DNA of 21,674 nt from positions 1-21,674 of the forward strand of contig CBFFRQ010000194.1 of assembly GCA_965644315.1 (NCBI GenBank), read 5' to 3'. The position numbers were made by a program, and so were the translations under genes. Each line of letters begins with the position of its first letter. The stretch's first letter is position 1. The notes below the pieces were generated by a model, which saw only the letters and a program-made list of their open reading frames with translations, made no database searches and was not told the DNA's origin. Source of the DNA: Caecitellus pseudoparvulus. Taxonomy: Eukaryota; Protista; Bigyra: Bicosoecida. Of this stretch, positions 1,162 to 21,674 are shown in pieces.

Positions 1162-1331
1162 AAAAAATAAAAAGGAAAAGCCAACGAAAATAAAATTTAA
1201 TTAATCAAACAATAAAAGGGAATTAATAATATTATGGTTATAACCTAACGCACCTTATGATAATACTTTATATATAAACCTTTTTTAAATCACTTAAAGA
1301 TTTGTTATTTTACATATATATATAATATAGT

Positions 1332-3035
1332 ATGGAAATATTCAAATTTACTGAATTTAAAAAATGTGTAGCAAATGATGAAGCTAAATGGAAAGCACAA
1401 AACTTTGATAACAAAAAGTTTAATGAAATTAAGAAAATTAAAAATTTTGAAGTTTGTGAATACTTAGAATCAAAAAATTACATTAAAAAAACTGTTTATT
1501 TAGTAAATGATGATTATATTACAGGTGGTGTAATTATCCCAAAAAAAATATTTGATGCAAAAATTCAAAGATTTCCTAAAATTCTTAAAGAATGGTTTAA
1601 GTTTGAGTATTGTAATTTTAAAACTCCAGTAATTAAAACTGATAGAGAAAAATTATTACCTGATGAATTTAATTTATTGCCTGAAGGATTACATAAATAT
1701 AAACCATTCAAAGATTTTGATAAAGAAATAAGAAAATATGCATTATATTATATAAACAATTATATACGATCTGTTTTATGCAATGATAAAGAAGAACATT
1801 TTCAATATATTATAAAATGGATTTCTTATATGATACAAGGCTATAGAAACGATGGTATGCTTGTTTTTAAAGGAATTGAAGGTTGTGGAAAATCAACATT
1901 TACAAAAATGATATGTGATTATATTTTAGGACGTAATAGAACACAAAAATCAGACTCAAAGCCATTAACTGGTGGTTATAATAGTGAATTAATGGGGAAA
2001 CAGTTGATATATTTTGAGGAATTGCGGTCAGGAACAAAAAGCGAACAAGAAATGGCAGCATCAACATTAAAAGATATGATTACAGCAGAAACACTGAATT
2101 ATGAAGAAAAATATAGAACAAGACTAAGTAATATTAAAAATGTTTCTAATTTTGTAAGTTTATCAAATAATTATTATGCTATTAAAGATAATCAAGGGCG
2201 ACGATACTTTATATTGGATATTAATACATCACATTATGATAATGAGGAGATGTGGGACATAATACATATGAAATGTATGAATAAAAAAATAGGACACGCT
2301 TTATATTGTTATTTTATGGAAGTAGATGTAAAAGGTTTTAGGTCTCAAAAAGATATGCCATTAACAGAAAATAAAATTGCATCTTTTGTTAAGTCCTATA
2401 CGCCTGAAATTATATTTATTAGAGATTATTATTTATTTACAAAAAAACCAATGAATATTAAAACAAACGATTTATATGCTGAGTTTTTAGACCATACCCC
2501 AGTTAATAATCCTTCAAAAAAATCATATTTTTATGATAAATTAAAACACTATGGATTCCAATACAGAAAATCAAATGGATATAATAAATATATTTATAGT
2601 CCTTTAGAACTTCAAGAACTAGCCGATAAATTTAAATGGGGTTTTATAGATGAAGCAGAAAATCACGAAAAAAAAGATGATTTAACAGAAAATGAAGAAG
2701 AATACACAAAAGAACAAGAATTAATAAATGACCAATCAAAAAGAATAAAAGAATTAAATAAAGAAGTGGAACAATTAAAACTACAAATAAAAAAATTAAC
2801 AGAAAAACCAATACCAGAATATGAACCAAAAATAGAAGAGCAAAAAGAAGAGCCAAAAAAAGAACCAAAAGAAGAGCAAATAAAAGAGCAAAAAGAAGAG
2901 CCAAAAGAAGAACCAAAAAAAGAACTAAAAGAAGAACCAAAAGAAGAGCCAAAAATTAAGCCCAAAAAGAATTTACAAGACGATTTTAATGATTATGCAT
3001 TTAACGATGAACCTGAAATCAAGTCCAAAGGTTAG
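1332..3035 (+). CDS. D5-like/superfamily-3 helicase (primase-helicase-type ATPase of viral/Polinton-like elements; DUF5906-like), possibly C-terminally truncated
   Basis: 567-aa intronless AT-rich ORF. Walker A GIEGCGKS (1872-1895), Walker B LIYFEE, LKDMIT..YEEKY motif, sensor FVSLSNN and arginine-finger-like GRRYFIL, then coiled-coil and K/E/P low-complexity tail. The stop codon is the TAG of the GGTTAG junction. Confidence 0.8.
   Translation: MEIFKFTEFKKCVANDEAKWKAQNFDNKKFNEIKKIKNFEVCEYLESKNYIKKTVYLVNDDYITGGVIIPKKIFDAKIQRFPKILKEWFKFEYCNFKTPVIKTDREKLLPDEFNLLPEGLHKYKPFKDFDKEIRKYALYYINNYIRSVLCNDKEEHFQYIIKWISYMIQGYRNDGMLVFKGIEGCGKSTFTKMICDYILGRNRTQKSDSKPLTGGYNSELMGKQLIYFEELRSGTKSEQEMAASTLKDMITAETLNYEEKYRTRLSNIKNVSNFVSLSNNYYAIKDNQGRRYFILDINTSHYDNEEMWDIIHMKCMNKKIGHALYCYFMEVDVKGFRSQKDMPLTENKIASFVKSYTPEIIFIRDYYLFTKKPMNIKTNDLYAEFLDHTPVNNPSKKSYFYDKLKHYGFQYRKSNGYNKYIYSPLELQELADKFKWGFIDEAENHEKKDDLTENEEEYTKEQELINDQSKRIKELNKEVEQLKLQIKKLTEKPIPEYEPKIEEQKEEPKKEPKEEQIKEQKEEPKEEPKKELKEEPKEEPKIKPKKNLQDDFNDYAFNDEPEIKSKG
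2820..2965 (+). repeat. Coding low-complexity KEEP/KEQ repeats in the helicase C-terminus
   Basis: Repeated AAAGAAGA(G/A)CCAAAA units encoding KEEPK. Confidence 0.8.
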
Positions 3036-6000
3036 ATCTCAATGCATTGCACTTCACCTCCACGCTTGCAACTTACGCGGTTCGGCTTGGGCGTCACATG
3101 CGGCGCTCGCTGCCGTGCACGAATGCACTGCAGAGGCGTCGCAGCGGCTTCCACTTGTGTGGATCTGCAACCAACACAGTCTTGCGACCGTTGTAGAGGT
3201 CGCCGCTTGCTAGGGCGTGTTCTACGCCCGCCCCGTGGGGAGAGAGTCCACTCCTTGGCCAGCTTGAACCACACCATAGAGAGTCCATCCAGGTGGCGCG
3301 CTCGACAATCAGCACTTCACAACATAATCCAAATCATTTCTCTGTGCTGTACCTCATGCTTGCTCGCTTCAACGTGCCTGCTGCCGCGGTGAACCCTTGC
3401 GGGGCAACTGCAGGCCGTTGTGAGGGAGGGGTGCTGCTGTGGCGTTTCGGTTGAAACGCCGCGGCGGCGGAGGGACCGCCTGGCGCACAAGCGCGCGCCG
3501 CAGCACCACATCCCCTTCGCAGGTTACTTTCCTCATATATAGGTTCATCATCTGTCGCACTTGGATGCTGAGTCCGGAGCCGGTGAGTCCGTGCCTGCGG
3601 CCCCGCGCGTGGTCCGTCCGTACGTCAAGCACGGCTTGTTCCACCCGCGTTGCCGCAGGGCTGCTTCAAGGACATCAAGAGGCTCCATCATCGTCAGGTA
3701 GGTGCCCGCGAACCCATGCTTCAGCAATTCCTCCTCCTTTCGCAGAGCTATTCGACGATCATCGGGGGGGCTTCAGCAGGCGCACTGCTTCGCAGGAGAG
3801 TGACCGTGGTTGTCACCACGCCATATGTAAGCCTGCTATTGCACGCCCGCGCCCTCCAGTGCCTCTTCTTCGCCCTCAGAGCCTTGTCCCATGGAGACTG
3901 ACTGTTTCCCTCGGACCAAGCCGTGGTCAAACAAGGTCGACTGCTGGGAGAAGGACCGGGGTGGCCCGCGCTGTGAGCGATCAGGGAAGTAAGTGCGCTG
4001 CGTCCTCCGCGTGCGTACATCCTGAGTCTGCCTGTTCACAGCACTTGACACAGGAACCGTATGGCCAGGAAAGGGACAGGCACGGCCGTGAGCTGCCCAC
4101 CAGAGGTACCTTGCGTGCCGCTGGATGTGCACATGCTCTGGCGAGGTAAGTCGAAGCATGCGCTGCAGCATGACGTCCCACGCAGATGAAGCGAAGGCAG
4201 CGCCTGCCTGAAGCAACTTCTTCCAGAGGACAGGGGGCTTGACTGGACCACGAGCGGAGCGAAGGAGGAGATGGGGGTGGCTCATGACCGCCGCCCCTTC
4301 GGGACCCCACAGCTGCTGCTCCGGGTCCTCGTCAATGCGGAAGGGCCACTGGCCACATAGGAGCAAGCGGAGGAGGAGTCTGGAGGACGACCGAGGGGAA
4401 GCAGACCGAGCCTTCGCCAACTGAAGGACACAGGTCAGGGGGGCAGGGATGGACAGATGAGCAGGGGGGCGGTCGCCATGTACGTAGCTGTTGGACTGGG
4501 CTGCGATGGACAGCATGGTGGTGAAGGCGTCTTGCCTGGCTTGGTCCAGAGCTGGGTGGCTGCACCAGAGCAGGACGTGCTCGTGCAGAGTGGCCCACGA
4601 GACACTCCCGCAGAGTGGGCACGCTTCAAAGAGCGTCGGGGTGTCTTCGCCGTGGATGAACTGAAGAGTTTGCCAAAGATGGACTTTCACAACTTGTGGC
4701 CGGTCATTATCGCAGACCCACAGTAGTGGACTTGGGGCTGACGGGATGGGGTGGAGCCAGCAGAAGAACCGGGCCCCCACGCCTACATGATACGGGCGTG
4801 GACGGCGCACGCGGTGTAGGTCACCGGTGGGGGAGTATCCGAGGGCAGGGCATTCAGATGACTGGGCGATGTGCAAGAAGGAGCACACAACGTGCTGCCG
4901 CGCACGCCACGACATCTTGGCAGGGAAGGCAGGAGGCGACAGCATGCTTGAGGAGGAGGAGGCAGCCAGACCAAGGTACTTGATCTTGGGAGGCGTGGGG
5001 TCCAGGTCCTGTGTGTCGGTTTCGCTGTCTTGGGAAGCAGCACCTGAGCTTCCATCCCCTTGGATGAGCCCCTCAAGGGCACTGCGGCTGGGCAGGCAGC
5101 CGTGCAACCACAAGTCCAGCAGGCCGTGAAGAGCGAAGGGAGGGGGGATTCCTGATCGAGCGCGGTCCAGGTCTCCGTTCAAGTTGACAAGGAACTCCAT
5201 CGTGACTGGGGAGGGGAGCATGTCGAGCGCAACCGGCAGGGTCTGCAGCATGACCCTCGCTACTGGTGTCCCGGCATGGAGATCGGAGATGAGCTTGCGG
5301 AAGATGTTCGAGCGAAGCTTGGTTGCGCGTATGTGTGCAGGAAGGAAGCCACATGCGGCGAGTTTTGCATAGTTGTGCATCCTTGCCAGGGAACTTTGCA
5401 TGCCGATCTGCGTCTTGCTCAGTGCAATGGCGAGACCCCGATCCACTTCACGCAGGGGAAGGACCGAGTTGCGGACCTGAGTAGCGAGTATGTAGTCCGC
5501 CGCAGCCGTGATTGAGGCACTGCCTATGCGCTGCTTGAGGTCAAGGCCTACCCATTCACCTGTAAGTAGAGCACCGCACGCAAATCCCGCTTGTGTACAG
5601 GAAAGGCCCGCCTGTTTGAGGGCAAGGGCCCGCGTTTTGCGGACATTCTCGCATAGTGGAGCGCCAAGGAAGACATAGCTGCGTGATCGCTGGATGTGGA
5701 CACCACCAACTGTAAGTGCCTTCCCAGACTTGAGCCACCTGGTCCGCCATACTGCCTTGCGCCTCTCGTTCGCGCATACCCCGTTGACTGGTGCTGCGTT
5801 AGTTACCACCATGATGCCGGACTTTCTTGGGTTGATCGTCAGGCCCACACGCGCCCCCACAGCCCGCACTTCATGAAACATTCTTTGCATCGCAGAAGGA
5901 GACGTGGCCAAGCAAGCAAGATCGTCGGCATACAGAGTGTGAGTGAGGCGGCCTGCAGATGTAGGCACCCCAGCTCCAGCGTATCCCTGTTTAGGGAGTT

Positions 6001-9000
6001 CTTGAAGGCGCTGGGACAGAACATCAATGGCGACTTTGAAGAGTAAGGGTGACAGGGCGCCACCCTGAGGGACGCCGCTTGTGACAGGGAGGGGATCGCA
6101 CAGTCCGTGGGCCGTGTGGATGGAGACACTGGCCCGTGACATGTACTCTGACACAGTCTTGAGCAGGGGCTGAGGCAGTCGGGCGGCTTCAAGGATCTCC
6201 AGAATGGCGGCATGACTAACAGAGTCAAATGCTGCCTTGAAGTCAACAAACATCACAAGGACATGCTTGTCTGGTGAGCGTCGAAGGTAGCTATTTGTGG
6301 CCTCCTGAAGAGCAATGATTTGCTCGTGTGTGTTGCGTGCCTTGCTGAACCCTGCCTGCTCTCGCGAGATCCAAGACTTCATCCATGCTTCCACGCAGGC
6401 CGCGACGACGGAGAAGAACAACTTGGCTGGAGGAGGCCGACAGACAATCAGCCTGTACGTATCCACACGCCCTGGCATACTCGTCTTCTTTGGGATGAGC
6501 GTGCCCACGCCCTCATGGTACTTCGCAGGGCATGATCCACCTTCAAGGACTTTCAACAGGGCTTGACTGTAGTTCTTCTTGAACTTTGCACTGGAGTACT
6601 TGAGGTGCTCAGCCTGGAACTGACCTCTTCCAGGATTGCGGTGCAGATTGAGAGCATTCATGGCTTTGATCACAGTGTGTTCAGTTGGGAGCCAGGTCGC
6701 TGGTGGCTGGAACTCTGCATGCATGGATGGTAGCAGTCTTCTCAGCCCATACTTGAGAGGCGTCAGGGGTGTGACAGTCGGACTGATGATCTTCCCCATT
6801 TGCTCGCGAACAGTGTGCTTGACGGCAGTGCCTGCATGCACAAGCTTCCCATCGCTCCCGTACACAGACTGCAGGGATGCTGTCCCTGCCTTTTTCCTTC
6901 GACCAGACAGCCGCCTGACATGCATGTGGGCAGCAAAGGGGTCAACGACCGCCAGCTCTTTGATGCGCTGCTTGATCTGAAGAACCGAGTGCTTGTGCTT
7001 CTTCTTGACCAGGTGAGTGCACCGTCGCATTGCCTCCTTCCTGATCTGCACTGTGTGGGAAAGGTCTTCCACCATCATTCCTTTCTGTTCTCCAAGAACG
7101 CGGGTCATGACAGGATCTGAAGATCTCGCAGTGTTGTGGACCAAGGCAAGGCGTCGGTCAATGCGGCACAACTCGCGTCGCAGCTTCTTGGCCCGAGCTG
7201 TCATCTTCTTCTTCAGTTTACTGTACTTGGACACGTCAGTGAACACTTGAAGTACTTGAGGAGATGTTCCCTTGCAGGTAGCATGTGCCTTCTGGGCTGC
7301 TGCAGCAATAAGTTGATCCAACTTCGACAAGGCCTGTCCCTCTCCAGTGCTTGCAGGTGGTATGAGTGTGGTGGCCTGGGCATGGTCGAGGAGGCTTCGG
7401 TGGAGCGCTTGAGCTCTCTGTCCCGACAGTGTCGAGGACGGCCACCACGGCGGGACAGAGTGGGGTCGTTTCGGACAATGGGCGACCTTGGCCTTCTTCA
7501 CAAGCTTCAGGGCCACAGTTGAGGACAGCAGGAAGTGATCGCTGAAAATCAGGGCTGCCTTTTGCTGACGTCCAGCACTGGAGAAGGTGGTCGTTATCTT
7601 CAAGGGGCGTGTCATGGTTGTCTTCAGCAGTGGGCACAAAAGAATGTGGTCAAGTGCTCTGTTGTATGTCGCATGGGTCGGCACACCTGCCTTGCCTGGG
7701 GGTGAGAGTCCGCCCATTTGGCAGAGCCTGTCAAGTTCTTGGACATCATCAGTAGGATCAGGGATACCAGTCTCATTCACCCATGCCTCTTTCCCCCAGC
7801 ACTGCACACCACTGTCACCCGGGTGACAGTTCAGATCCCCCATAAGCACCATCATGTGCGTGTGTTGCAGGGACTCTACGGCCGCGTGCAGTTGCTCCCA
7901 GACTTCCTGCCTGTGGGGGAGCTTTGTGTCAGGGTCGGCCAGTGGCTTCTTGCGTTGTGCCGTGTGCCAGTTTGGTACGTATGCAGCAATGATGGCAAGT
8001 GGTTTGGGCTTGGCTGGGACTGAACATGCAACGATACAGCGGCCGTCGAGTCCCAGGTCGAGCAGTTGTGTGGCTCCAAGGCGTTTGTCCAGAAGAAGAG
8101 CCACCTCACTTCTCCCTGGTGGTCTGTCAGGGGGGTTGGGCCTAAAGCACTGGAGGCCTACCACCTCAGTGTCGAGGGTCCCATGCCCTCCGGGTTCTGT
8201 CAGGCAAAGTGCAAGCAAGGCAGTGTGGGCTTGGGGTGTTCGTGCACAGTGTATGACCTGGTGAAGGTGGGTTCCACAGGATCGTGCGACGTTCCAGGAG
8301 ACGAAAGCCACCTTGGTCAGGCCCTTTCGACCAACAGGGGTATGTGGACCCTGGTCCCACCGAGCAGACATTGAGTCCCAACTCTGTGGGATGAACTTCA
8401 TGAGTGGGTCATTGTCCTTGGCTTTCTCCAGCATGGAGGCACTGTGTCGTGTACGTCGTGCCTCTGGAAGGACAACCCGGGTTGCCTTTCCCGCGATGAG
8501 TGTACGCGCATGTGCAGTGCTGTCATTCACCACAAGCGGCAGGGGGGGGTACTCGTCTCGGATGGTCTTGAACGCATCACGCAGTCGATCGCGGAAGGAC
8601 CGTGTGTGACCTGAGAGTGGAGTGACCGCTACTCTGTACACAGTGGTTACCCCTTCCGTATGTAGCCGGATCAGACACTTGTGTAAGGGAAGTTCTGAGG
8701 TAGAGCTTGGCAAATCTGGGTTCCACATGTGAAGCACACCATGGTCATGGTCAATGAGGAGTAGTTGAAGGTGAGCACTATGCGCCTTGGATGGAATGGT
8801 CAAGGCAAAGGCAAAGTACACATCCTCAAAGTAGTCCTCCTGCCGTTCGTCCTCCATCACAGCTCGGACATCAAGCTGACTGCTCGGTAGGAGGTCTGCG
8901 CCCTTCAGCGCCTTGTGACCGTTGTTGATGTGCTGCATGAGCAGGTGTAAGCCGGGAAGGAGGACAGGCGGGGATGCAGCTGACAGCAGGGAGTCTTCAG

Positions 9001-9853
9001 GTGCAAAGCGCACCAGGAGTTTGCGAAAGGCCGTCAGATCATCCGGTGCCGCATCCACCTCCCCGCTCCCAGTTCTGGTGACGGGGACGACATCGGAGTC
9101 AGGTGTTTGTGGGGCTGCCATGCCTGCAGAGGCCTTGATGTTGCCCATCGCATGTTGGGCTGCAGCAATGGTTGCTGCGTGATGAAGAAGAGCGAGGTCA
9201 TCTTGCTGTAAGATTGGTTCACCGGCGGCAGTCTCAAGACAGGCCTGTACGCAGTGTCTGTCCTCAGTGTTACTGTACACATGGTCAGAGGACAGGAGGT
9301 CACACAGCTTTGTATGGTGCTTGATAGACCGTTTCGGTAGGCATGCCGGCACTCGAGGACACGCAGCAAGTTCAACCACTTTGGTTGGGGGCTGGGCAGG
9401 AGCTGCAGCTGCTTTCGGTTCAGGCCCAGTTGTTGTGGGGGGTGCCTTCGGGCTTGGGAAGAGCTGGTCCCATCGCGTGGCTGTGCCCTTGCTGACTCGA
9501 GACGTTGGAAGGGCCACGTCGGCCTTGGTGCGTGGTGGGGTGGTACATGCAGGCGGGTTCGGCTTGGGGGAACCTCTGCCTTCCTCAGACGGAGCAGGCT
9601 CGCTCTTGAACAGGTCAGCAAAGGTGCGGTGGCGCTTTGGTTCCTTCTTTCCTTTTCGCAGGCCTCGCCGCACCTTCTTCTGCCTTCTGCCATCCTTCAG
9701 TGCTTGGGTGGGAGGCTGGGCCTCCTTGGCTGTACTTTCACCGACAGGGGCATCTCCCTCAGAGGGGACGGAATGTCCGGTGGCATTGTACATGGTCTTT
9801 GGCTGGGATCGTTGTGCAGCCAGGGAAGTCTTGACAAGGTTCACCACTGATGC
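3036..9853 (-). mobile_element. Element A: telomere-associated APE-type non-LTR retrotransposon, 5'-truncated
   Basis: Bounded by GGTTAG (3030-3035) and a TTAGGG tract from 9854. Contains an APE-RT-CCHC ORF. Its 3' ~200 nt are homologous to B and C; it lacks the ~780 5' nt present in B and C. Confidence 0.93.
3836..9847 (-). CDS. Non-LTR retrotransposon polyprotein (basic/disordered linker, putative Cys-protease-like domain, APE endonuclease, reverse transcriptase, CCHC knuckle, unknown C-terminal domain); N-terminus missing
   Basis: APE ~7510-8314: SWNV, LTE, EVALLL, AYVP, GDLN, LDHI, SDH. RT ~5660-6650: LIPKK, YRLI, QAGF, VDFKAAFDSV, GVPQGGALSPLLF, YADD, INPRKS, YVFLG. Knuckle CPLC..H..C at 4562-4621. 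2003 uninterrupted codons. Confidence 0.95.
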   Translation of the reverse strand: MVNLVKTSLAAQRSQPKTMYNATGHSVPSEGDAPVGESTAKEAQPPTQALKDGRRQKKVRRGLRKGKKEPKRHRTFADLFKSEPAPSEEGRGSPKPNPPACTTPPRTKADVALPTSRVSKGTATRWDQLFPSPKAPPTTTGPEPKAAAAPAQPPTKVVELAACPRVPACLPKRSIKHHTKLCDLLSSDHVYSNTEDRHCVQACLETAAGEPILQQDDLALLHHAATIAAAQHAMGNIKASAGMAAPQTPDSDVVPVTRTGSGEVDAAPDDLTAFRKLLVRFAPEDSLLSAASPPVLLPGLHLLMQHINNGHKALKGADLLPSSQLDVRAVMEDERQEDYFEDVYFAFALTIPSKAHSAHLQLLLIDHDHGVLHMWNPDLPSSTSELPLHKCLIRLHTEGVTTVYRVAVTPLSGHTRSFRDRLRDAFKTIRDEYPPLPLVVNDSTAHARTLIAGKATRVVLPEARRTRHSASMLEKAKDNDPLMKFIPQSWDSMSARWDQGPHTPVGRKGLTKVAFVSWNVARSCGTHLHQVIHCARTPQAHTALLALCLTEPGGHGTLDTEVVGLQCFRPNPPDRPPGRSEVALLLDKRLGATQLLDLGLDGRCIVACSVPAKPKPLAIIAAYVPNWHTAQRKKPLADPDTKLPHRQEVWEQLHAAVESLQHTHMMVLMGDLNCHPGDSGVQCWGKEAWVNETGIPDPTDDVQELDRLCQMGGLSPPGKAGVPTHATYNRALDHILLCPLLKTTMTRPLKITTTFSSAGRQQKAALIFSDHFLLSSTVALKLVKKAKVAHCPKRPHSVPPWWPSSTLSGQRAQALHRSLLDHAQATTLIPPASTGEGQALSKLDQLIAAAAQKAHATCKGTSPQVLQVFTDVSKYSKLKKKMTARAKKLRRELCRIDRRLALVHNTARSSDPVMTRVLGEQKGMMVEDLSHTVQIRKEAMRRCTHLVKKKHKHSVLQIKQRIKELAVVDPFAAHMHVRRLSGRRKKAGTASLQSVYGSDGKLVHAGTAVKHTVREQMGKIISPTVTPLTPLKYGLRRLLPSMHAEFQPPATWLPTEHTVIKAMNALNLHRNPGRGQFQAEHLKYSSAKFKKNYSQALLKVLEGGSCPAKYHEGVGTLIPKKTSMPGRVDTYRLIVCRPPPAKLFFSVVAACVEAWMKSWISREQAGFSKARNTHEQIIALQEATNSYLRRSPDKHVLVMFVDFKAAFDSVSHAAILEILEAARLPQPLLKTVSEYMSRASVSIHTAHGLCDPLPVTSGVPQGGALSPLLFKVAIDVLSQRLQELPKQGYAGAGVPTSAGRLTHTLYADDLACLATSPSAMQRMFHEVRAVGARVGLTINPRKSGIMVVTNAAPVNGVCANERRKAVWRTRWLKSGKALTVGGVHIQRSRSYVFLGAPLCENVRKTRALALKQAGLSCTQAGFACGALLTGEWVGLDLKQRIGSASITAAADYILATQVRNSVLPLREVDRGLAIALSKTQIGMQSSLARMHNYAKLAACGFLPAHIRATKLRSNIFRKLISDLHAGTPVARVMLQTLPVALDMLPSPVTMEFLVNLNGDLDRARSGIPPPFALHGLLDLWLHGCLPSRSALEGLIQGDGSSGAASQDSETDTQDLDPTPPKIKYLGLAASSSSSMLSPPAFPAKMSWRARQHVVCSFLHIAQSSECPALGYSPTGDLHRVRRPRPYHVGVGARFFCWLHPIPSAPSPLLWVCDNDRPQVVKVHLWQTLQFIHGEDTPTLFEACPLCGSVSWATLHEHVLLWCSHPALDQARQDAFTTMLSIAAQSNSYVHGDRPPAHLSIPAPLTCVLQLAKARSASPRSSSRLLLRLLLCGQWPFRIDEDPEQQLWGPEGAAVMSHPHLLLRSARGPVKPPVLWKKLLQAGAAFASSAWDVMLQRMLRLTSPEHVHIQRHARYLWWAAHGRACPFPGHTVPVSSAVNRQTQDVRTRRTQRTYFPDRSQRGPPRSFSQQSTLFDHGLVRGKQSVSMGQGSEGEEEALEGAGVQ

Positions 9854-13086: not shown

Positions 13087-13114
13087 TTAGGGTTAGGGTT
13101 AGGGTTAGGGTTAG
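13087..13114 (+). repeat. Short telomeric spacer (TTAGGG)4TTAG
   Basis: Direct reading between the 5' end of B and the 3' end of C. Confidence 0.98.
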
Positions 13115-16100
13115 CAACTCACAATGCATTTCACCTCGGCACAGCTTGGCACCGTACAGCTTGAGCGTCACACGGGCGCCCCACAATGCACCTCTGCACA
13201 TGTAGGACGCCACAGCGGCTACCGCTTGGCGCGGATTCGCAACAAACACAGGCTTGCACCCGTTATATCTGCCGCCACTTGCTAGGGCAGGTCCCTGCCC
13301 GCTCCAATTCATCATCTTGGCCCTCCTCCGCTACACTTCATCCCTTGCTCCGCCAGCGCCAGACACCTGGGGCACACCAGAGCACACCCAGGCATCCGCG
13401 CAGTCTTGACAACAGATCATAATCCAAATTCCTCACCCACCTCCTCTGTGGCCCTCATAGGCCTCTCTGCGCCCTTCATGAGGTGTGTGCTCCGCCTCTG
13501 CGCGGGAACTCGGCCGGGTGCGTGGTGCGGAATTCGATCGCGCACACCAGCACCCGTGCGCACACACGCGCCCGCGCCACAGAGCGCATCGCGCGCATCA
13601 AGGGGGATACAGAAAGGAAAAGGACCTTCTTCTTCAACCCGTCACGCCCTGGTTTCGTGGTGAGTGAGCTTGCTTCATCGTCAGCCGCCATCCGGGCCGC
13701 GGCCGTGCAGCACTGCGGCTGCACACGCGCCGCGGCCCGAGGCACGCTCCCGCTCACTCCACTGCTACTCGCAGGCTATGTAGTAAGTAAAAGGTAAGGT
13801 CTTGGGCATCTGCTTCGGGCTACCGTGGTTATCACCACGCTTCACACAGGTTCATCACGTCAGGACACTCGTGGAGGGTAGACGCGGCCACAAGCGTGGC
13901 TGTTCCACTCCCCGCCCGCACGCCTGCGTTCCGCCTTACTCCTCGCTCTCTTCACAGGAACCATCGGGCCCTTCCCCCTCACCATCAGTGTCTGCATGGG
14001 CTGGCTGAGGCCCCATGAAGTGCTGCAGCGTCCTCTGGACCTTGCCCTCCGTGGACGGCACTTGGCCAGCCTTGGCAGGGAAAAGGTGCGTGCCCTGCGG
14101 CGAGTGCGGGGCCTGCGCGTGTGCCGCGTGGCCGCTGACCGCACTGGCTGCGTGCGGCCAGGCAGCGGCGCCCCGCGCCCATGTACTGCCCACCACAGGT
14201 ACTCAGCATGCCTCTGGACAGCAAGGTGGTGGGCATCGGTCATACGCAACATGTAAGTGACTGTGACCCGCCACGCCTTTGCTGTGAACTCAACCGCGCT
14301 GCGCAGGATGTCTTGCCATACAGCTGGGGCACGGACACGGCAAGGACCAGCACGGTGGACGAGGTGGGGGTGGGAGAGGACAGCCGCCTCTTTCATAGAG
14401 ACAAGCTGCTCTTCGTCGGCCAGCCCCCACCGGTGAGGCCACTGCCCGCAGAGCAGGAGCCTGTGGAGGACCTCGAGGTCCCGCAGGCTTCGCGGCTCTG
14501 GGTCGGGGGCACGAAGGAGGGCGTGGCAGATCTTGGGGGGATGGGCAGGCACTGCACTTGGCCCGCCGCGGACTCGGGCACAGCTGACCTGTTGGCCAGT
14601 TCTCTGAACTTGGTCATCGTGTGTTGGCGTGCCATGGTGAGTTCGTGGTGGGTGCAGTGCAGCAGGATGTGCACGTGCAGCTGTACATCGGTGTTGAGTC
14701 CGCAAATCGGACAGCACTCGTACAGAGTGGCACTGTCCCCCCCATGAAGAAGCTGTAAGGTCTGGAAGTGATGGACCATCACTCTGGTGGGCCTGTCATC
14801 AGGACAGACCCAGAAGAGGGGTTCACCCTGTGTGGCAGTGGATGTAGCCACACGAAGTGCTGCGCACCAGGCCCAAGATGATACGGCCTGGGCTTCTGCA
14901 CTTGGGGGATTCGGCTGTCGGTGGTGTAGTGGGCAGCTGCACTCGGCACTGCCTGGGCTACATGAAGATACGACGCGAGGACTTGGCGACGCAGGGCCCA
15001 GGGGGTGTCTGCCGTGAAGGCCGGGGGTTCGGCCATGGACGACGTCTCGCTGGCAGCCACCCCAACCACCGCAGACCTGTGGAGGCCCGGGGTGGTCTCA
15101 AGTCCGGCAAGGACTTGGGCAAGGGCTGTGGCAGCATGCTCAGAGCCAGGTGCACATGCAAGCCGAAGCTGTGCAAGGTCTGGCATGCAGCCCATGAGCC
15201 AGAGGTCCAAGAGGGCATGCAGTGCCCACGGAGCAGGGACACTGGCAGCCCGGAGTCGACCTCCATCAGCAATGGTGTCGACGATGAAGGTCGTCGACAT
15301 CGAAGCAGGCATAAGGTCAAGGGCCTGCGGGATGGTCAGGCACAGAGCTCGGGCAAGAGGGGTGTCCGAGTGCAGCATCCGGAGAGCCTTGACAAACATC
15401 CCAGTCCGCAGTTGCGTGGAGCGGATGTGGGCAGGCAGGACTCCGCATAGAGCCAGCTTGGCGTAGCTGTGGGGGCGCATGAGTGCACTCTGCGAGCCGA
15501 CTTGGGTCCTGTCCAAGGCGAGGGCGACGCCGCGGTCAACATCGCGCAGCGGAAGCAGGGAACTGTTGGCTTGGGTGGACAGCATGTAGTCGGCGGCTGA
15601 CGTGACAGTGGCATACCCAACCAGGTGCCGCTGCTGCACATCGAGCCAGGTGGCACTGAGCAGCGCGCCCGCAGTGAACTCCGGCTTGGATGCAAGCAAG
15701 CCCAGCTTGCTGCAGGGTGAGTGCACGGGTCTTGGCAGGATGTTCGGACATCGGCACACCCAAGTAGGTGTACTCGGCCACCCGTTGGATGGACTTGGTG
15801 CCAACCTTCAGCATGCTGCCCGCTTTGAGGGCAGCCGAGCGCCACACCAGCTTCTTCCTTTCACTGACTGGTGTCCGGCTGCCTCGCACGGAGTTGGCAA
15901 GGATCATGACCCCGGACTTCGACGGGTTGATGGCAAGGCCAACCCGGGGCAGCGATGGCCTTCACCTCTACGAAGATTCGGTGCAAGGCCGTGGCAGACG
16001 TTGCGATGCAGGCCAGGTCGTCTGCATACAGGGTGTGGGTGACATGGCCTGCTGGTGTTGGGATGCCCACTCCCTGGATGCCTTGGAGGGGCATCTCGTG

Positions 16101-19100
16101 GAGCCTTTGCGACAGCACATCTATCGCAACCTTGAAGAGGAGGGGGACAGAGCTCCTCCTTGGGGGACACCATTGCTGACAGGAAGGGGGCGACAAAGAC
16201 CATGGCGCGTGTTGATGGAGACCGTCGCCTTGGACATGTACTCCTTGATGACGGCCAGGAGTGGCGCAGGGAGGGAGGCAGCCTCAAGGATCTCTGTGAT
16301 GGCTGCGTGGCTCACAGAGTCGAATGCTCCCGGAAGTCCACGAAGAGTACCAGGACTTGCACTGGCGCTGTTGACTGTCGCAGGTGGCCCTTGATCACCT
16401 CTTGGAGAGCCAAGATGTGCTCATGCGTGTTGCGGTGTCGAGTGAAGCCAGCCTGCTCCTTCGACACCCATGTTTGCATCCAGGACTCCAGGCATGCAGC
16501 GGCCACTGAGGAAGAAGAGCTTCGCAGGAGGGGGGCGGCATACAATCAAGCGGTATGTGCGAGGCCGCCCAGCTTCACTCGTCTTCTTGGGGATGAGTGA
16601 CCCAATGCCTGCATGGTAGTCTGGCGGGCAGGTGCCGTGTTGCAACGCTTGGATGACGGCTTGGGAGTAGATGTCTTGGAAGCCTGGCCCAGCATACTTG
16701 ATGTGCTCTGATTGGAACTTGCCAGAGCCTGGGTGTCGATGCAAGCTGAGTGATCCCATGAGGACTTTGACTTGCTTCTTGGAGGGAAGCCATGTCACTG
16801 GCGGGGTGAAGGACTCTTGGGCTGAGGGAAGGAACCTTGCCAGCCCGTACTTCAGCGATGTTGGCCTGGGCTTGTTGTGACTCAGGATGCCAGACATCTG
16901 CTTGGCAACCTCCTCCTTCACCAGATCAGGGGAGGAGATGAGCACTCCCTGCATGGACTTCACGGACCTGATGGGAGCTCGACGGGCTCGACGACCTCGA
17001 CCTGACAGGCGCTTGATGTGTTGGTGGGCAGTGAAGGGATCCGTGACAGCGAGTTCCCTCAAGCGTGCTCGGATCCTGGACAGAGTGACATGTCGCTTCT
17101 TCTTCACAAGCCTCGTGCACTTCCGCATTGCATCCTTGCGGCATTGAAGCGTGGCGTGTAGCTCTTCAGTGGCCATGGAGATTCCCTCTCGGATGGCACG
17201 GGCGTGGTCTGGCTGAGGATGCCGACCGGTGGCAAGTGCGAGCTTCCGGTGCAGCTTGGCAATGGTCTTCCGCAGCTTGGACACGCGTGCAGTCATGGAC
17301 TTCTTGAGCCCGCTGGCCGCCTTGATGTCCATCTTCAGCTGGGGCAGAGGGTCACGTGGGGTCTTGGCCTTGCGATGTGTGTCCATAGCCGCAGCTTCGA
17401 TAGCACCGTTGAGAAGGATAGGCTCGGGGCGGCGCTGCCTGTCTGGAGCGCGGTGGCCCGCGAGCTGAGGGATCCTCGAAACATCGCTTGCGCTGCCAGC
17501 CCAGCCTCTGTCGCTGAGGTCCACCTGAGGTGGCACCGCCTGTACATGGGGGCTCTTGGATGATGTCCACACTCGCTTGGCAGGCTTCACTCGGACTTCT
17601 GCTGCAACAAGATGATGGTCACTGAGGACTAGTCGAGCGGCACTCTTTTTCGTCCCGCTGGAGAACGTTGTTGTGATGTGCAGTGGTCTGCTCAACATAC
17701 TGTGGAGGTCCTCAGTCATCAGGATGTGGTCCAGAGCCCGACCATACCTGTGCGTTGGCAGGCCACCAAGTCCGGCTGGGATCAGTGGGCCTTGCTCGCA
17801 GAGGAGCTGCATCTGCAGGATGTCTTCAGTGGGCTCGGGAATGCCGGTCCGGTTCTCCCAGTGATCTGCTCCCCACGTGCCTACCCCTTCGTCACCTGGA
17901 TGAGTGTTCAAGTCACCCATGATGACAATCATGTGGGTGAGGCGGAGCTGTTGAACAGCAGACTCAAGCTGCCGCCAAACCTCTTGCCGGTACGGAAGCT
18001 TCGTGTCCGGATCAGCGACTGGCTTCTTTCGCTGCCAAGAGTGCCAGTTGGGTACGTACGTGCGCTATGATGGCGATGGGTTGTGGGCTTGCAGGGATCG
18101 AGCAAGCAATTATGCAGCGACCATCAACGTCGAGGCCCGGGATCACTGAGCCATTGAGTCTTCGATCAAGCAGCAAGGCAACCTCACTCCGCCCGACAGG
18201 CCGATCAGGCGGGCTTGGGCGGAAGCATTCAAGGCCCATGACTTCCGTGTCGAGCAGGCCGTGCCCCCCAGGCTCTGTGACACAGAGTGCCAACATGGAC
18301 GACGCACTGCACACAGACTGGACACAGGTGACGACATCGTGGACACACTGGCCGCAGGAGCCGTGCACATTCCAAGCAGCAAGTGCGAGTGTCATGTGTC
18401 TTCCGCGGCCGACAGGGGTATGGGGTGCATCGCTACTGATCTGGTCGGCGACTTGTACAGATGTTGGGATGAGTGACAGTATGGGGTCAACCGTCTTGGC
18501 TCTCTCATCGGCAGCTGCTTGTTGGCGCGTGGTGCGGCCTACAGGGAGGTACACCCGTGTTGTCTTGCCAGTGATGAGAGTCTTTGGGTAGACAGTCTCG
18601 TCCTCAGCTACGAACGGGAGTGGGGGAAAGTCAGACCTGAGGGACAGCATGGCCAGCCGCACTCTGTCTTTGAAGGGAATCGGCTTGCCACTCAGCGGGG
18701 AGGATGAGACACGGTACACAGACTCAATGCCCATCGAGTCGAGTGTGTTCAGGCAGCCGTCGATTGGAATGTTGGTGCTCTTGAAGGGTCTCGGTCAGGG
18801 TTCCACAGTACAAGGTGTGGACTTCTCAGCGTTGACGACAATGAGCTGAAGGTGGGAGACACCTCCAGTGTCAACCAAGCTGAGAGCAAACGCGAAGTAC
18901 ACCCCAGCAAAGACTTTTGCCTCGGAGGTCATCTCTTTCTCTGCCTTGACATCAACCAGGCAGTGTCCAGACACTGTGCCGCCTTCAAGTTCCCGATGGC
19001 CCTCGTTGATACGCGTGAGCAAGAGATGAAGACCAGGGAGGAGCACAGGTGGACAGGCACTGGTGAGTGCTGCATCATCAGGCGCATGTCGGTACAGGAA

Positions 19101-20720
19101 CGATTGAAAGAGGTCAAGCTTGTCTTGCTCGGTGGTCGGCATGGAAGGTTCTGTTTCACAGACAGCATGGACCTCCGAGTCTGGTGCCAGGGTGACGCGC
19201 GCTGCTCTTCTTCAACACAGCACAGAAGGATGTCTGCGCCGCTTGGATGGTGGCTGCGTGTTGAAGAAGGACAAGGTCATCGTCATTGAAGAGTGGCTCT
19301 CCTGCTGCTGTTTCAAAAAGCAGGCCTGGACACAGTGTCGTTGGTCCTTATTGCGGAACGCGTGCGCAGAGGCGAGGAGTTGCTGCAAGGGGGAACCCAA
19401 GTCAAGGTTTGCCTGTCCAAGCCGTGCTGGTCGGCGACTGCAGTCAGCAAGTTTTAGCAGCGTAGTGGGTGCCGTGTTTGCAGGACTTGCAAGAGGTGGC
19501 TGTGCCCCGCTGCCCGATAGTGCCGCAGCTGTCGGGGACACGGGAGGAGGTCTCTGCGTGGGCTGGGCGAGTCCCATCTGCTGAAGGTCGGGCGCTTGAC
19601 TCTGGTGGACGGAAGAGGGACATGTTCAGGGGAAGGAGCAGCTTGGCCTGACGACTCGGCGGGTGCAGATGGAGGGGAGGGCGCTGTGGGGCGAGTAGTC
19701 ACGACGCCCTCCTTGAACAGTTCAGCAAAGCGCCGAGGAGGAGAGCTCTTTGTCGATGGCTTGCGTTTGCCCCTCCGTGTCTTCTTCTTCTTGGGACCGC
19801 CTTCAGCAAGGGGCTTTGGCAGTGTGCTTGGCAGCTTGTCGACAGAGCGTCATCTTCTGGAGAGACGGAGGTCCGGACAGGCTTTGGAGCACGCTTGGCG
19901 ATGGAGTGAGTGCTGGTGACATGGGCATGGACAAGCTTCAAGATCTTGGACACATCCCCACTCTCACAGGCAATGTTGGTTGCTGCCTCAGAGATCTTTT
20001 GAGCAACCTTCACTACAGAGGGAGGGGCGATCACGCTGACCCTGGCGCGCTCTGACGTGAACTGCCGCGTGTTGGAGTACACCACGCCCACAGAGCCGCC
20101 CCTTCAACATGATGATGAAGTCTTCTCGCACAGCAGCAGCAACGCGCAGGGACTTGGCAATGGCGGGGCCTTCACCGTCACTCGGCAGCGTGACAAGGAG
20201 AATGGTCTGCCCTGGTGCGGATTGTTTCAGCGCGGAATTAGCGCGCACCATCACAGGAGCAGCTCCAGGAAACTCGGCCTCCAGCTCATCTCCGAAGATG
20301 CCAAGCCACTTGCGGACGAAAAATGATGCATCTTGGCCATCCGTGCAGTCAATGTCCATGCCACCGAGCTGGAAAGTCCGGGCTGCCCTCGGCGTGACAT
20401 GTCAGTCAGCACGCCTGTTCGTGGCCGCCCTGACACACGCTGCTCCAGGCACTTGTCCGCGAAGAGCACGCCGAGGACTTGGCTGGCCTTGGATGACATG
20501 ATGATGAAGCAATGGCCTCGGGCAAGCAGTGGTGCAGCGTCCAGCCGGAGCCGCACTTAGCACTGCGTGGGGAGCGTGGCGTGCGGAAATCGCACTGCTG
20601 CTCACCCGCGCACCCAATGCAATGCACTAGCGCTGTGCAACACCACACTTGGGTGCACGAGCGCCTGGATTAGGCATTGTTAGCAATGCACAACTTATGA
20701 TTAGGTTGACATTTGGAAAG
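13115..20720 (-). mobile_element. Element C: full-length (7.6 kb) telomere-associated APE-type non-LTR retrotransposon, divergent paralog of A
   Basis: Telomeric repeats on both sides; conserved 5' and 3' termini; colinear protein homology with A over A's whole length. Confidence 0.93.
13936..20499 (-). pseudogene. Frameshifted polyprotein ORF of element C (APE, RT, CCHC); true pseudogene or sequencing-indel artefact
   Basis: About 16 ORF-track fragments carry AWNV, VTEP, GDLN, LDHI, SDH, LIPKK, QAGF, GVPQGGALS, YADD, YTYLG and CPIC..H..C in order, separated by single-base shifts. Confidence 0.85.
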
Positions 20721-20721
20721 T

Positions 20722-21674
20722 TTAGGGTTAGGGTTAGGGTTAGGGTTAGGGTTAGGGTTAGGGTTAGGTTAGGGTTAGGGTTAGGGTTAGGTTAGGGTTA
20801 GGGTTAGGGTTAGGGTTAGGGTTAGGGTTAGGGTTAGGGTTAGGGTTAGGGTTAGGGTTAGGGTTAGGGTTAGGGTTAGGGTTAGGGTTAGGGTTAGGGT
20901 TAGGGTTAGGGTTAGGGTTAGGGTTAGGGTTAGGGTTAGGGTTAGGGTTAGGGTTAGGGTTAGGGTTAGGGTTAGGGTTAGGGTTAGGGTTAGGGTTAGG
21001 GTTAGGGTTAGGGTTAGGGTTAGGGTTAGGGTTAGGGTTAGGGTTAGGGTTAGGGTTAGGGTGAGGTATAGGGATAGGGAGAGGGTTTGGGATAGGGTTA
21101 GGTTAGGGTTACGTTAGGGTTATGGAAAGGGTTAGGGTAAGGGTTAGGGTTAGGGTTAGGGTTAGGGTTAGGGTTAGGGTTAGGGTTAGGGTTAGGGTTA
21201 GGGTTAGGGTTAGGGTTAGGGTTAGGGTTAGGGTTAGGGTTAGGGTTAGGGTTAGGGTTAGGGTTAGGGTTAGGGTTAGGGTTAGGGTTAGGGTTAGGGT
21301 TAGGGTTAGGGTTAGGGTTAGGGTTAGGGTTAGGGTTAGGGTTAGGGTTAGGGTTAGGGTTAGGGTTAGGGTTAGGGTTAGGGTTAGGGTTAGGGTTAGG
21401 GTTAGGGTTAGGGTTAGGGTTAGGGTTAGGGTTAGGGTTAGGGTTAGGGTTAGGGTTAGGGTTAGGGTTAGGGTTAGGGTTAGGGTTAGGGTTAGGGTTA
21501 GGGTTAGGGTTAGGGTTAGGGTTAGGGTTAGGGTTAGGGTTAGGGTTAGGGTTAGGGTTAGGGTTAGGGTTAGGGTTAGGGTTAGGGTTAGGGTTAGGGT
21601 TAGGGTTAGGGTTAGGGTTAGGGTTAGGGTTAGGGTTAGGGTTAGGGTTAGGGTTAGGGTTAGGGTTAGGGTTA
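20722..21674 (+). repeat. Terminal telomere (TTAGGG)n, at least 950 bp, G-strand running to the window end
   Basis: Direct reading; degenerate patch at ~21061-21140. Confidence 0.99.

What the first reader, a model, noticed from the sequence alone, without database searches (positions are those of the whole stretch)
3030..21674. Head-to-tail telomeric retrotransposon array with autonomous and non-autonomous partners alternating with TTAGGG tracts
Seen: three related elements in one orientation (3' proximal, 5' distal), each capped distally by TTAGGG. They are clearly divergent in protein sequence, so they look like separate families rather than copies. Known: this polarity and arrangement recall Drosophila HeT-A/TART, Bombyx TRAS, Giardia GilM/GilT, Magnaporthe MoTeR and Athena elements. 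However, MoTeR and Gil use restriction-like endonucleases, Athena is Penelope-like, and TRAS/TART have two ORFs and poly(A). Inference: a single-ORF, APE-type, poly(A)-less lineage that builds chromosome ends together with telomerase, possibly undescribed.
Basis: partly seen in the sequence, partly recalled or inferred. Interest (0 to 1): 0.92.

Follow-up and report, generated by a model that had tools for sequence, protein, structure and literature searches.

The report
Telomere-targeting LINE stack on truncated virophage
This chromosome end of a GC-rich protist that still has telomerase is built from three head-to-tail copies of an undescribed telomere-specific jumping-gene lineage, one of them a partner without reverse transcriptase, alternating with TTAGGG repeats, and the stack is seeded on a cut-off virus-like element.

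Summary
The scan has already reported this system on other contigs of the same genome, so it is not new to the scan.

- **Layout.** Three minus-strand non-LTR elements lie 3' end inward and 5' end outward. Each is followed distally by TTAGGG, and the last tract runs to the contig end.
- **Element A** is 5'-truncated but keeps an open 2003-codon frame with endonuclease (APE) and reverse transcriptase (RT).
- **Element B** is the abundant RT-less partner. It keeps only the N-terminal protein.
- **Element C** is a full-length 7.6-kb autonomous copy. Its frameshifts are mostly homopolymer indels against 99.5%-identical intact copies, so they are probably assembly errors.
- **Shared ends.** All families share a precise 5' end and a structured 3' end that stops at GCAATGCATTG-N(4-7)-CTAAC(C). 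There is no poly(A).
- **Genome-wide.** 70 exact 5' ends and 171 3' ends lie almost only at contig ends, in this polarity.
- **Host and independent support.** The genome encodes TERT. A separate metagenome scaffold shows a full-length copy between CCCTAA tracts.
- **Relatives.** The RT has almost no close relatives among 1.8 billion representative proteins.
- **New in this window.** The array joins a truncated AT-rich virophage-like element through a single GGTTAG, which looks like a healed chromosome break.

The parts
1..65 (.). Short GC-richer flank at the contig start, proximal to the AT-rich element
   Evidence: Sequence read. Only one weak match elsewhere in the genome (C99). No match to the telomeric elements.
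66..3029 (+). AT-rich (22-28% GC) virophage-like (EMALE-like) element, 5' part only. It has terminal repeats at about 66-700 and a D5/VapE-type helicase gene at 1332-3029. The element is cut off at ...CCAAA.
   Evidence: Composition. Pfam DUF5906 3.8e-16 and VapE-like 2.4e-10. Repeats and helicase copies occur on many contigs. 75%-identical copies have a 573-aa gene followed by more AT-rich genes. Layout matches low-GC EMALEs in PMC8547959.
3030..3035 (+). Single telomeric unit GGTTAG joining the truncated AT-rich element to the 3' end of element A. Its TAG supplies the stop codon of the helicase frame.
   Evidence: The same GGTTAG^ register occurs at all 3' junctions.
3036..9853 (-). Element A: a 5'-truncated copy (6818 nt) of an autonomous family, with an open frame of 2003 codons (3836-9847) and an 800-nt 3' UTR
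   Evidence: Its first residue aligns to residue 157 of the full-length P0001. About 88% nt identity to L002, L003 and L043. dN/dS 0.14 against L002.
8312..9382 (-). A: N2 domain, papain-fold cysteine-peptidase-like (conserved HCVQAC Cys and a downstream His)
   Evidence: AF2 mean pLDDT 77. Nearly all of the 50 listed VIA matches are papain-fold peptidases or DUBs; the best is Josephin, Z 7.4. Foldseek not significant. Atlas hints are weak.
7535..8233 (-). A: APE-type endonuclease domain
   Evidence: Pfam PF03372 6.4e-8. Catalytic N, E, Y, D/N, D and SDH are invariant across families.
5765..6496 (-). A: reverse transcriptase core
   Evidence: Pfam RVT_1 1.1e-30. PDB matches: R2Bm 5e-20, human L1 ORF2p 1e-15.
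4562..4621 (-). A: C-terminal CX2CX10HX4C zinc-knuckle motif
   Evidence: Conserved in all family members and in P0002. Aligned in P0122.
3030..3189 (-). Structured, conserved 3' terminus of A. The equivalent stretches are 10158-10317 in B and 13109-13268 in C.
   Evidence: Alignment A1: 71% column identity across at least 7 UTR types. 28 pairs, 96.7% paired, 9 compensatory pairs, and 0 of 500 shuffles reach the covariation score.
9854..10163 (+). TTAGGG tract (310 bp) between A (5' end) and B (3' end)
10164..13085 (-). Element B: RT-less partner (2922 nt) with full-length 5' and 3' termini. It encodes only N1 (12194-12763) and N2 (10794-11729).
   Evidence: 22 copies are 100% identical and about 30 more are 99% identical, all at contig ends.
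11730..11735 (-). G6 homopolymer where B's frame shifts between N1 and N2. Probably a consensus error, or a real 1-nt variant.
   Evidence: About 30 other copies carry an uninterrupted 755-codon frame.
12194..12763 (-). B: N1 domain starting at the conserved MPRRGAARTF, with an RRM-like fold
   Evidence: AF2 pLDDT 75. The best VIA matches are the human LINE-1 ORF1p RRM (Z 5.1, 91 residues aligned) and many other RRMs. This is weak evidence.
13086..13114 (+). Short TTAGGG tract (29 bp) between B and C
13115..20721 (-). Element C: full-length (7607 nt) autonomous-type element with apparent frameshifts
   Evidence: 99.5% identical to L013, L014 and L021, which carry a 2207-codon frame. There are 23 indel letters, mostly in homopolymers, against 17 mismatches.
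20722..21674 (+). Terminal TTAGGG tract running to the contig end, with the G-strand reading 5'->3' outward

Best explanation
The window is a real chromosome end. Its last 18.6 kb were laid down by a family of telomere-specific, APE-encoding non-LTR retrotransposons working alongside telomerase.

**Element structure.** A full-length element is about 7.6 kb. It has:
- a conserved 5' end, (A)CTTTCCAAATGTCAA;
- one ORF of about 2160-2210 codons, reading RRM-like N1, basic linker, papain-fold peptidase-like N2, APE, RT, then a C-terminal domain with a CCHC knuckle;
- a structured 3' UTR ending GCAATGCATTG-N(4-7)-CTAAC(C), with no poly(A).

**Proposed mechanism.**
- Reverse transcription is primed by a G-strand 3'-OH ending ...GGTTAG. 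This is either an APE nick in duplex telomere or a free chromosome end.
- The copy therefore always lies 3' end inward and 5' end outward.
- Telomerase, or the rest of the pre-existing tract, supplies TTAGGG beyond the 5' end.

**The RT-less partner.** B carries the same two termini and only the N1+N2 protein. It is copied in trans by the RT of the autonomous families.

**This window.** The first attachment (A) was made through a single GGTTAG onto a broken, integrated virophage-like element. That is a healed terminal truncation.

**Shown:** anatomy, junction register, polarity, genome-wide confinement to contig ends, intact catalytic residues, purifying selection and the presence of TERT.
**Inferred:** the priming mode, trans-mobilisation of B, peptidase and RNA-binding functions, and the healing event.
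For: - **Anatomy and domains:**
- **3' junction register:** constant GGTTAG^ with no poly(A) at 37 distinct junctions.
- **5' junction:** constant 5' end and phase.
- **Census:** exact 5' 14-mer, 57 forward hits (all within 12.2 kb of a contig start) plus 13 reverse, reversed-pattern control 0. 3' motif, 132 plus 39, control 0. Protein hits lie only at contig ends with the 5' end outward.
- **Shared 3' structure:** covariation across families, including B.
- **APE:** catalytic residues invariant.
- **Selection:** dN/dS 0.14 for A against L002, with 0.07 in the RT.
- **B copy number:** at least 50 copies at 99-100% identity.
- **TERT:** Telomerase_RBD 79 bits plus RVT_1 in an open frame.
- **Independent assembly:** a full-length copy lies between CCCTAA tracts in metagenome scaffold L043, 97% identical to L002.
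- **Healing junction:** the AT-rich element stops at 3029, whereas related copies continue with further genes.
Against: - The A/virophage junction rests on one 21.7-kb contig whose C region carries many homopolymer indels.
- Expression and transposition are not shown.
- Junction anatomy cannot separate an APE nick from priming on a free end.
- 14 of 37 3' junctions carry 8 nt or less of telomeric sequence before non-telomeric DNA. This fits an element-borne CTAACC tail or end-priming better than random insertion into long tracts.
- Identical B copies could partly reflect recombination between subtelomeres rather than retrotransposition.
- The N1 and N2 fold matches are weak (Z 5.1 and 7.4).
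- A few 3'-motif hits may be interstitial, for example C18:155166. I could not inspect them.
Confidence: 0.78

Rival explanations
1. The elements extend chromosome ends without using their endonuclease. The RNA's own 3' tail (...CUAACC) pairs with, or templates GGTTAG onto, any free 3' end, and the RT copies the RNA outward. Drosophila HeT-A/TART and the Penelope-like Athena/Coprina elements work this way. Under this reading the APE would serve another step, or serve only occasional internal insertions.
For: - At least CTAAC follows the 3' motif at 35 of 37 junctions. 14 of the 37 have 8 nt or less of telomeric sequence before non-telomeric DNA, often the interior of a 5'-truncated neighbour.
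- The A/virophage junction has a single GGTTAG.
- Some elements abut each other with only CTAAC between them (L025).
- SART1Bm, a proven endonuclease-dependent telomeric LINE, needs at least three target repeats (PMC7265360 abstract).
Against: - The APE catalytic residues are invariant in every autonomous family, and the domain is under purifying selection (dN/dS 0.13).
- Elements also sit inside long tracts with a constant phase at both junctions. That is what precise endonuclease cleavage gives.
Confidence: 0.3
2. The junction between the AT-rich virophage-like DNA and element A (3029/3036) is an assembly chimera or a rare subclonal variant. In that case the array is real but its proximal boundary lies elsewhere.
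For: - The contig is short (21.7 kb) and starts inside a repeated element.
- The C region has 23 homopolymer-type indel letters against intact copies, which suggests thin or badly polished coverage.
- No read check was possible.
Against: - The join sits exactly at the universal GGTTAG^ register rather than at a shared repeat.
- A's 6-kb frame has no frameshift, so that part is well polished.
- Other arrays also end on non-telomeric DNA through one or two telomeric units.
Confidence: 0.12
3. The arrays spread mainly by recombination between chromosome ends (break-induced replication or subtelomeric gene conversion) acting on old insertions. On this view ongoing retrotransposition is not the main driver, and the elements are passengers in ordinary subtelomeric repeats.
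For: - Many B copies are 100% identical, and the same C-then-B order recurs on C154, C196 and this contig.
- A is a mosaic: dS is 0.02-0.05 in the first 512 codons but 0.44-1.1 downstream. This shows that exchange between copies happens.
Against: - Telomeric spacers between the same neighbours differ in length: 29, 53 and 68 nt.
- Neighbours and 5'-truncation points differ from end to end.
- Several families keep long intact ORFs under purifying selection, with intact catalytic residues.
- A related strain or species in a metagenome carries a 97%-identical full-length copy.
Confidence: 0.15

Closest known systems
Bombyx mori TRAS1 / SART1 (R1 clade, APE-type telomeric-repeat-specific LINEs)
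   Same: APE plus RT LINEs that insert at a fixed position of the host telomeric repeat, in a host that also has telomerase-type repeats. They form head-to-tail telomeric arrays, and TRAS has the same polarity relative to the G-strand (my own knowledge; SART1Bm requirements from PMC7265360).
   Different: - Here there is one ORF, not two, and no poly(A).
- The 3' end is a structured UTR ending in CTAACC.
- N-terminal RRM-like and papain-fold modules are fused to the pol.
- There is an abundant RT-less partner.
- The APE profile finds no LINE endonuclease in the PDB by sequence.
- No Bombyx or insect R1 proteins appear among the closest hits.
Drosophila HeT-A / TART / TAHRE (Jockey clade)
   Same: Head-to-tail terminal arrays with the 3' end inward. 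Autonomous elements sit beside a very abundant RT-less partner that keeps only the N-terminal (gag-like) protein (my own knowledge).
   Different: - Drosophila lacks telomerase and telomeric repeats. This host has TERT, and TTAGGG tracts separate the elements.
- Fly elements have poly(A) and separate gag and pol ORFs.
- Here every 3' junction is in one register of the telomeric repeat.
Penelope-like Athena / Coprina terminal elements
   Same: Telomere-associated, 5' end outward, and interspersed with telomerase repeats. Their 3' ends carry a short stretch complementary to the G-overhang (my own knowledge). That resembles the constant CTAAC(C) terminus here.
   Different: Those elements have a Penelope-type RT and lack an endonuclease. 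These have a LINE-type RT (best PDB matches R2 and L1 ORF2p) and an intact APE.
Magnaporthe MoTeR1/MoTeR2 and Giardia GilM/GilT
   Same: Telomere-targeted non-LTR elements in telomerase-positive microbes. MoTeR1 and MoTeR2 are an RT-encoding element and an RT-less partner sharing termini (PMC7367193 abstract; the rest from my own knowledge).
   Different: Those lineages use a restriction-like endonuclease (CRE and related groups). Here the endonuclease is APE-type.
Unannotated relatives P0002 (coral metagenome) and P0122 (3724 aa, run SRR24000141)
   Same: The only real relatives in 1.84 billion representative proteins. They are 30-36% identical across APE, RT, the C-terminal domain and the CCHC knuckle. 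P0122's contig begins with CCCTAA repeats, and the gene's 5' end points towards them.
   Different: P0002's 7.9-kb contig shows no telomeric repeats. P0122 has a 2100-residue N-terminal extension with no Pfam hit and lies 7.5 kb from the repeats. Neither has the ATGCATTG...CTAACC terminus within the DNA available.

Membership tests
Non-LTR (LINE) retrotransposon, APE type | LINE-type reverse transcriptase domain | tested here: met
   RVT_1 1.1e-30. Best PDB matches are R2Bm and human L1 ORF2p.
Non-LTR (LINE) retrotransposon, APE type | N-terminal apurinic/apyrimidinic-type endonuclease with catalytic residues | tested here: met
   PF03372 6.4e-8. N, E, Y, D/N, D and SDH are invariant in 9 sequences.
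Non-LTR (LINE) retrotransposon, APE type | No terminal repeats; frequent 5' truncation; 3' end joined to the target | tested here: met
   No head-to-tail similarity within any element. A and many other copies are 5'-truncated. 3' ends are always complete.
Telomere-specific retrotransposon (functional class) | Copies confined to telomeric repeats or chromosome ends in one orientation | tested here: met
   A handful of possible interstitial 3' motifs could not be inspected.
R1 clade (TRAS/SART) | Two ORFs (gag-like ORF1 plus pol ORF2) and a poly(A) tail | tested here: not met
   One continuous ORF from MPRRG to the C-terminal domain. The 3' end is ...ATGCATTG-N-CTAACC with no A run.
R1 clade (TRAS/SART) | RT groups with R1-clade references in a phylogeny | not testable with these tools
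   No curated clade references are available. The nearest generic hits are 29% identical or less and of mixed architecture.
Jockey clade telomeric elements (HeT-A/TART/TAHRE) | Host without telomerase; arrays replace telomeric repeats; poly(A) | tested here: not met
   TERT gene present. TTAGGG tracts lie between and beyond the elements. No poly(A).
Penelope-like terminal elements (Athena/Coprina) | Penelope-type RT, no endonuclease (or GIY-YIG) | tested here: not met
   APE domain present and LINE-type RT.
CRE/MoTeR and GilM/GilT | Restriction-like endonuclease C-terminal to the RT | tested here: not met
   The endonuclease is N-terminal and APE-type. The C-terminal domain shows only a CCHC knuckle and no Pfam RLE hit.
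Endogenous mavirus-like virophage (EMALE), for 66-3029 | Low-GC element with terminal repeats and a primase/helicase gene at its 5' end, multicopy in a GC-rich host | tested here: inconclusive
   Composition, repeats, DUF5906/VapE helicase and multicopy status all fit. The layout matches PMC8547959. No capsid, integrase or polymerase gene lies in the window. The host species is unconfirmed, because one search returned no names.

The most novel reading that the evidence does not exclude
A deep-branching LINE lineage of stramenopiles has become a second, RNA-templated end-maintenance system next to telomerase. Its RNAs end in a telomerase-template-like CUAACC and can be reverse-transcribed directly onto any free 3' end. 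This caps eroded or broken chromosomes, here a break inside an integrated virophage. A self-processing polyprotein (RRM-like protein, papain-fold peptidase, APE-RT) and a HeT-A-like partner supply the RNA-binding component. This would be an evolutionary intermediate between telomerase-only and retrotransposon-only telomeres.
Probability: 0.25. Interest if true: 0.9.

Novelty: new variant of a known kind. Interest (0 to 1): 0.68.

Why it matters
Telomere-specific retrotransposons are known from only a few lineages: insects, rotifers and fungi, Giardia, and Magnaporthe. They are central to ideas on how telomerase and retroelements relate.

What this system adds:
- The host is a free-living, culturable, telomerase-positive protist with a small genome.
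- Dozens of chromosome ends carry the arrays, and several coexisting families have intact ORFs.
- A fly-like RT-less partner is the most abundant member.
- The RT lineage has almost no known relatives.

This window adds a junction where the system appears to have capped a chromosome break inside an endogenous virus-like element. That makes it testable whether such elements help heal ends or only parasitise telomeres. It also bears on how endogenous virophages are lost.

The scan has already reported the system on other contigs of this genome, so this window mainly confirms and extends it.

Tried and rejected
- **RT clade placement.** No curated LINE references can be reached. Names of the nearest generic hits were uninformative: pseudoscorpion hypothetical proteins and one Chlorella 'LINE-1 ORF2'.
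- **False relatives.** P0123 and P0124 looked like relatives by score but are multi-RT chimeric gene models in animal genomes. I rejected them.
- **Pfam on the remaining regions.** The N-terminal region, the APE-RT linker, the C-terminal domain and B's ORF gave nothing.
- **APE against the PDB.** The family profile found only ExoIII-like chains at 1e-3 and no LINE endonuclease.
- **Foldseek on the N2 model.** No significant hit.
- **'A is the intact autonomous copy'.** Rejected, because A is 5'-truncated.
- **'C is a decayed pseudogene'.** Largely rejected in favour of homopolymer consensus errors.
- **'The array always starts on EMALE DNA'.** Other arrays also abut AT-rich DNA (L002, L008), but those flanks do not match this element. 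I made no claim.
- **Host species.** Not confirmed. The helicase search returned no names.
- **Further own-genome DNA.** Possible interstitial copies (C18:155166, among others) and several contig lengths went unchecked.
Full report
**What is in the window**

The window is the whole of contig C194 (21,674 bp) of a 30.6-Mb, 215-contig eukaryotic assembly.

TTAGGG repeats occupy three stretches:
- 9854-10163
- 13086-13114
- 20722-21674, which runs to the contig end with the G-strand reading outward.

There are 186 matches to an 18-mer against none in shuffles.

Composition splits sharply. Bases 1-3000 are 22-28% GC, and everything from about 3030 onward is 55-65% GC.

**The three elements**

Three elements lie between the tracts, all on the minus strand.

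- **A (3036-9853).** It carries an open 2003-codon frame with Pfam Exo_endo_phos and RVT_1.
- **C (13115-20721).** It matches A's protein over residues 131-1936 at 40-49% identity, but in several frames.
- **B (10164-13085).** It matches only residues 25-509 of A, so it has no endonuclease (APE) or reverse transcriptase (RT).

B and C share their first 143 nt at 82% identity. All three share their last 130-200 nt. None has LTRs or a poly(A) tail.

**Corrections to the picture**

*A is not a complete copy.* Aligned with family members, its first residue corresponds to residue 157 of full-length proteins, which all start MPRRGAARTF. So A lacks about 156 codons and the 5' UTR.

*C is the full-length element.* It is 99.5% identical over all 7607 nt to copies on other contigs (L013, L014, L021) that carry an uninterrupted 2207-codon frame. 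It differs by 17 mismatches but 23 indel letters, and nearly all the indels sit in homopolymer runs. That ratio is the signature of long-read consensus error, not decay.

*B's frameshift is probably an error too.* It lies in a G6 run at 11730-11735. The N2 coding sequence beyond it remains open in the other frame. The genome holds 22 copies identical to this one and about 30 more, 99% identical, with one continuous 755-codon frame.

**Element anatomy**

A full-length element is about 7.6 kb. An independent metagenome scaffold (L043) holds a complete copy, 97% identical to the genome's L002 and L003. It is flanked on both sides by CCCTAA repeats.

- **5' end.** It is precise, (A)CTTTCCAAATGTCAA, and almost always follows ...CCCTAAC in one phase.
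- **Single ORF, in order:**
  - N1, about 190 aa.
  - A basic linker.
  - N2, about 350 aa.
  - APE, with every catalytic residue invariant across families.
  - A linker of about 300 aa.
  - RT.
  - A 600-aa C-terminal domain with a conserved CX2CX10HX4C knuckle.
- **3' UTR.** It is about 800 nt. Its last 160 nt are far better conserved than the coding DNA, at 71% column identity across at least seven UTR types.
- **3' structure.** The terminus folds into stems that are 96.7% paired, with nine compensatory pairs. No shuffle out of 500 reaches the observed covariation, and slid controls collapse.
- **3' terminus.** Every 3' end stops at (G/A)CAATGCATTG, then 4-7 nt, then CTAAC(C).

**Domain leads**

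*N2.* The model has mean pLDDT 77. In an all-against-all structural search, nearly all of the 50 listed matches are papain-fold cysteine peptidases or deubiquitinases. The best is a Josephin domain at Z 7.4, rmsd 4.2, with 160 residues aligned. A conserved Cys (HCVQAC) sits at a helix start, and a conserved His sits on a later strand. Foldseek alone was not significant, so this is a moderate lead.

*N1.* The model has pLDDT 75 and is RRM-like. The best matches are the human LINE-1 ORF1p RRM (Z 5.1) and many other RRMs. This is a weak lead.

If both leads hold, the single ORF is an ORF1p-like RNA-binding module and a pol joined through a processing peptidase. The RT-less partner keeps exactly the RNA-binding and peptidase parts.

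**Genome-wide distribution**

- **Protein hits to A.** The 30 best all lie within about 25 kb of a contig end with the 5' end outward. The contig lengths needed for the minus-strand hits could be inferred from truncated loci.
- **Exact 5' 14-mer.** It occurs 57 times forward, all within 12.2 kb of a contig start, and 13 times in reverse. The reversed control pattern occurs 0 times. About 8.6% of the genome lies that close to a contig start, so this placement is not chance.
- **3' motif.** It occurs 132 times forward and 39 in reverse, with control 0. Nearly all listed forward hits are within 30 kb of a start.
- **Possible exceptions.** A few hits, such as C18:155166, may be interstitial. I could not fetch them.
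- **B.** It is the most abundant member, with at least 50 copies at 99-100% identity.

**Selection and host telomerase**

- A's lineage shows dN/dS of 0.14 against L002. By domain this is 0.07 in the RT and 0.13 in the APE.
- B's N1 and N2 give 0.17-0.25 against the autonomous families. Synonymous sites there are saturated, so these values are rough.
- The host encodes TERT: Telomerase_RBD at 79 bits plus RVT_1, in a long open frame.

**Junction register and mechanism**

On the G-strand, every 3' junction reads ...GGTTAG followed by the complement of the element's 3' end. A G-strand 3'-OH ending in TTAG therefore primed reverse transcription. This explains the fixed polarity.

The intact, selected APE argues for a nick in duplex telomere, as in TRAS and SART. 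However, of 37 distinct 3' junctions in the loci I hold, 14 carry 8 nt or less of telomeric sequence before non-telomeric DNA. That DNA is usually the interior of a 5'-truncated neighbour. SART1Bm, by contrast, needs at least three repeats (PMC7265360).

The spike at one unit suggests one of two things:
- the terminal CTAACC is carried by the RNA itself; or
- elements can be copied onto free ends after minimal telomerase action.

I give endonuclease-independent end-priming about 0.3 as the main mode. The two modes may well coexist.

**The proximal boundary**

Bases 66-3029 are the 5' part of a multicopy, AT-rich, virophage-like element.
- It has terminal repeats found on many contigs and a DUF5906/VapE helicase gene.
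- Related copies (75% identical helicase, 573 aa) continue with further AT-rich genes.
- Here the element stops at ...CCAAA. A single GGTTAG follows, whose TAG closes the helicase frame, and then comes the 3' end of A.

This layout matches the low-GC endogenous mavirus-like elements of Cafeteria burkhardae, which have the primase/helicase gene at the 5' end (PMC8547959). That paper does not mention telomeres. I could not confirm the species, because one search returned no names.

The simplest reading is a terminal truncation inside an integrated virophage that was healed by this system. A chimeric join is the rival reading, at about 0.12. It cannot be excluded without reads.

**Relatives and prior knowledge**

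- **Word-indexed search, 5.8 billion proteins.** It found only P0001 (the metagenome copy) and P0002 at 33% identity. Everything else was 29% identical or less.
- **Exhaustive profile search, 1.84 billion representatives.** It added P0122 (3724 aa, 30% identical over APE, RT and the C-terminal domain) before a plateau of generic LINEs.
- **P0122's context.** Its contig begins with CCCTAA repeats, and the gene's 5' end faces them. This is suggestive, but n = 1.
- **Rejected high scorers.** Two other high-scoring proteins are multi-RT chimeric gene models.
- **Literature.** Searches found no description of this system.
- **Earlier scan reports.** Reports on other contigs of this genome describe the same system. 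My results agree with them, and I reached them independently.

**Verdict**

This is a new variant of a known kind: a telomere-specific APE-LINE lineage with a HeT-A-like partner in a telomerase-positive protist. This window adds:
- a candidate chromosome-healing junction;
- a recombinant element A;
- evidence that the apparent frameshifts in B and C are assembly errors.

Noticed in passing
window 3836-9847 (-): Element A is a mosaic. Against L002, its first 512 codons have dS of 0.02-0.05, while everything downstream has dS of 0.44-1.1. This implies recombination or template switching between two families.
   Followed up: partly
window 66-731: Two different terminal-repeat modules of AT-rich elements lie back to back. 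66-631 and 631-684 each match many contigs separately, and both begin GGGGGAC...CATAAATG. There is also a 196-bp tandem repeat at 212-569. This may be a nested or tandem virophage-like insertion.
   Followed up: no
L039 (G000:C89:892901-894767): At another contig end, two short 5'-truncated telomeric-element fragments (A-type and C-type 3' ends, joined by GTTAG) are followed distally by the terminus of an AT-rich virophage-like element. So such elements also integrate into or beside the arrays.
   Followed up: partly
L002 and L008, 3' flanks (G000:C114, C153): Two other arrays end, through 7-15 nt of telomeric sequence, on AT-rich DNA (30-36% GC) that does not match this window's AT-rich element.
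   Followed up: partly
L044 (Logan SRR24000141 contig, 18.8 kb): The only distant full-length relative is a 3724-aa ORF (P0122) with a 2100-residue N-terminal region and no Pfam hit. Its contig starts with CCCTAA repeats followed by CCGGCAAGGA. The same 8-nt filler, GGCAAGGA, occurs at one junction in this genome (L021).
   Followed up: no
window 21062-21140: A stretch of degenerate repeats (GGTGAGGTATAGGGATAGGGAGAGGG...) lies inside the terminal TTAGGG tract. It could be variant repeats or read errors.
   Followed up: no
window 12886-13085 and 20522-20721 (-): The conserved 5' UTR of the elements contains several telomere-like C-strand motifs (CTAATCA, GCTAACA, CCTAATCC) within its first 60 nt. 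Their meaning is unknown.
   Followed up: no
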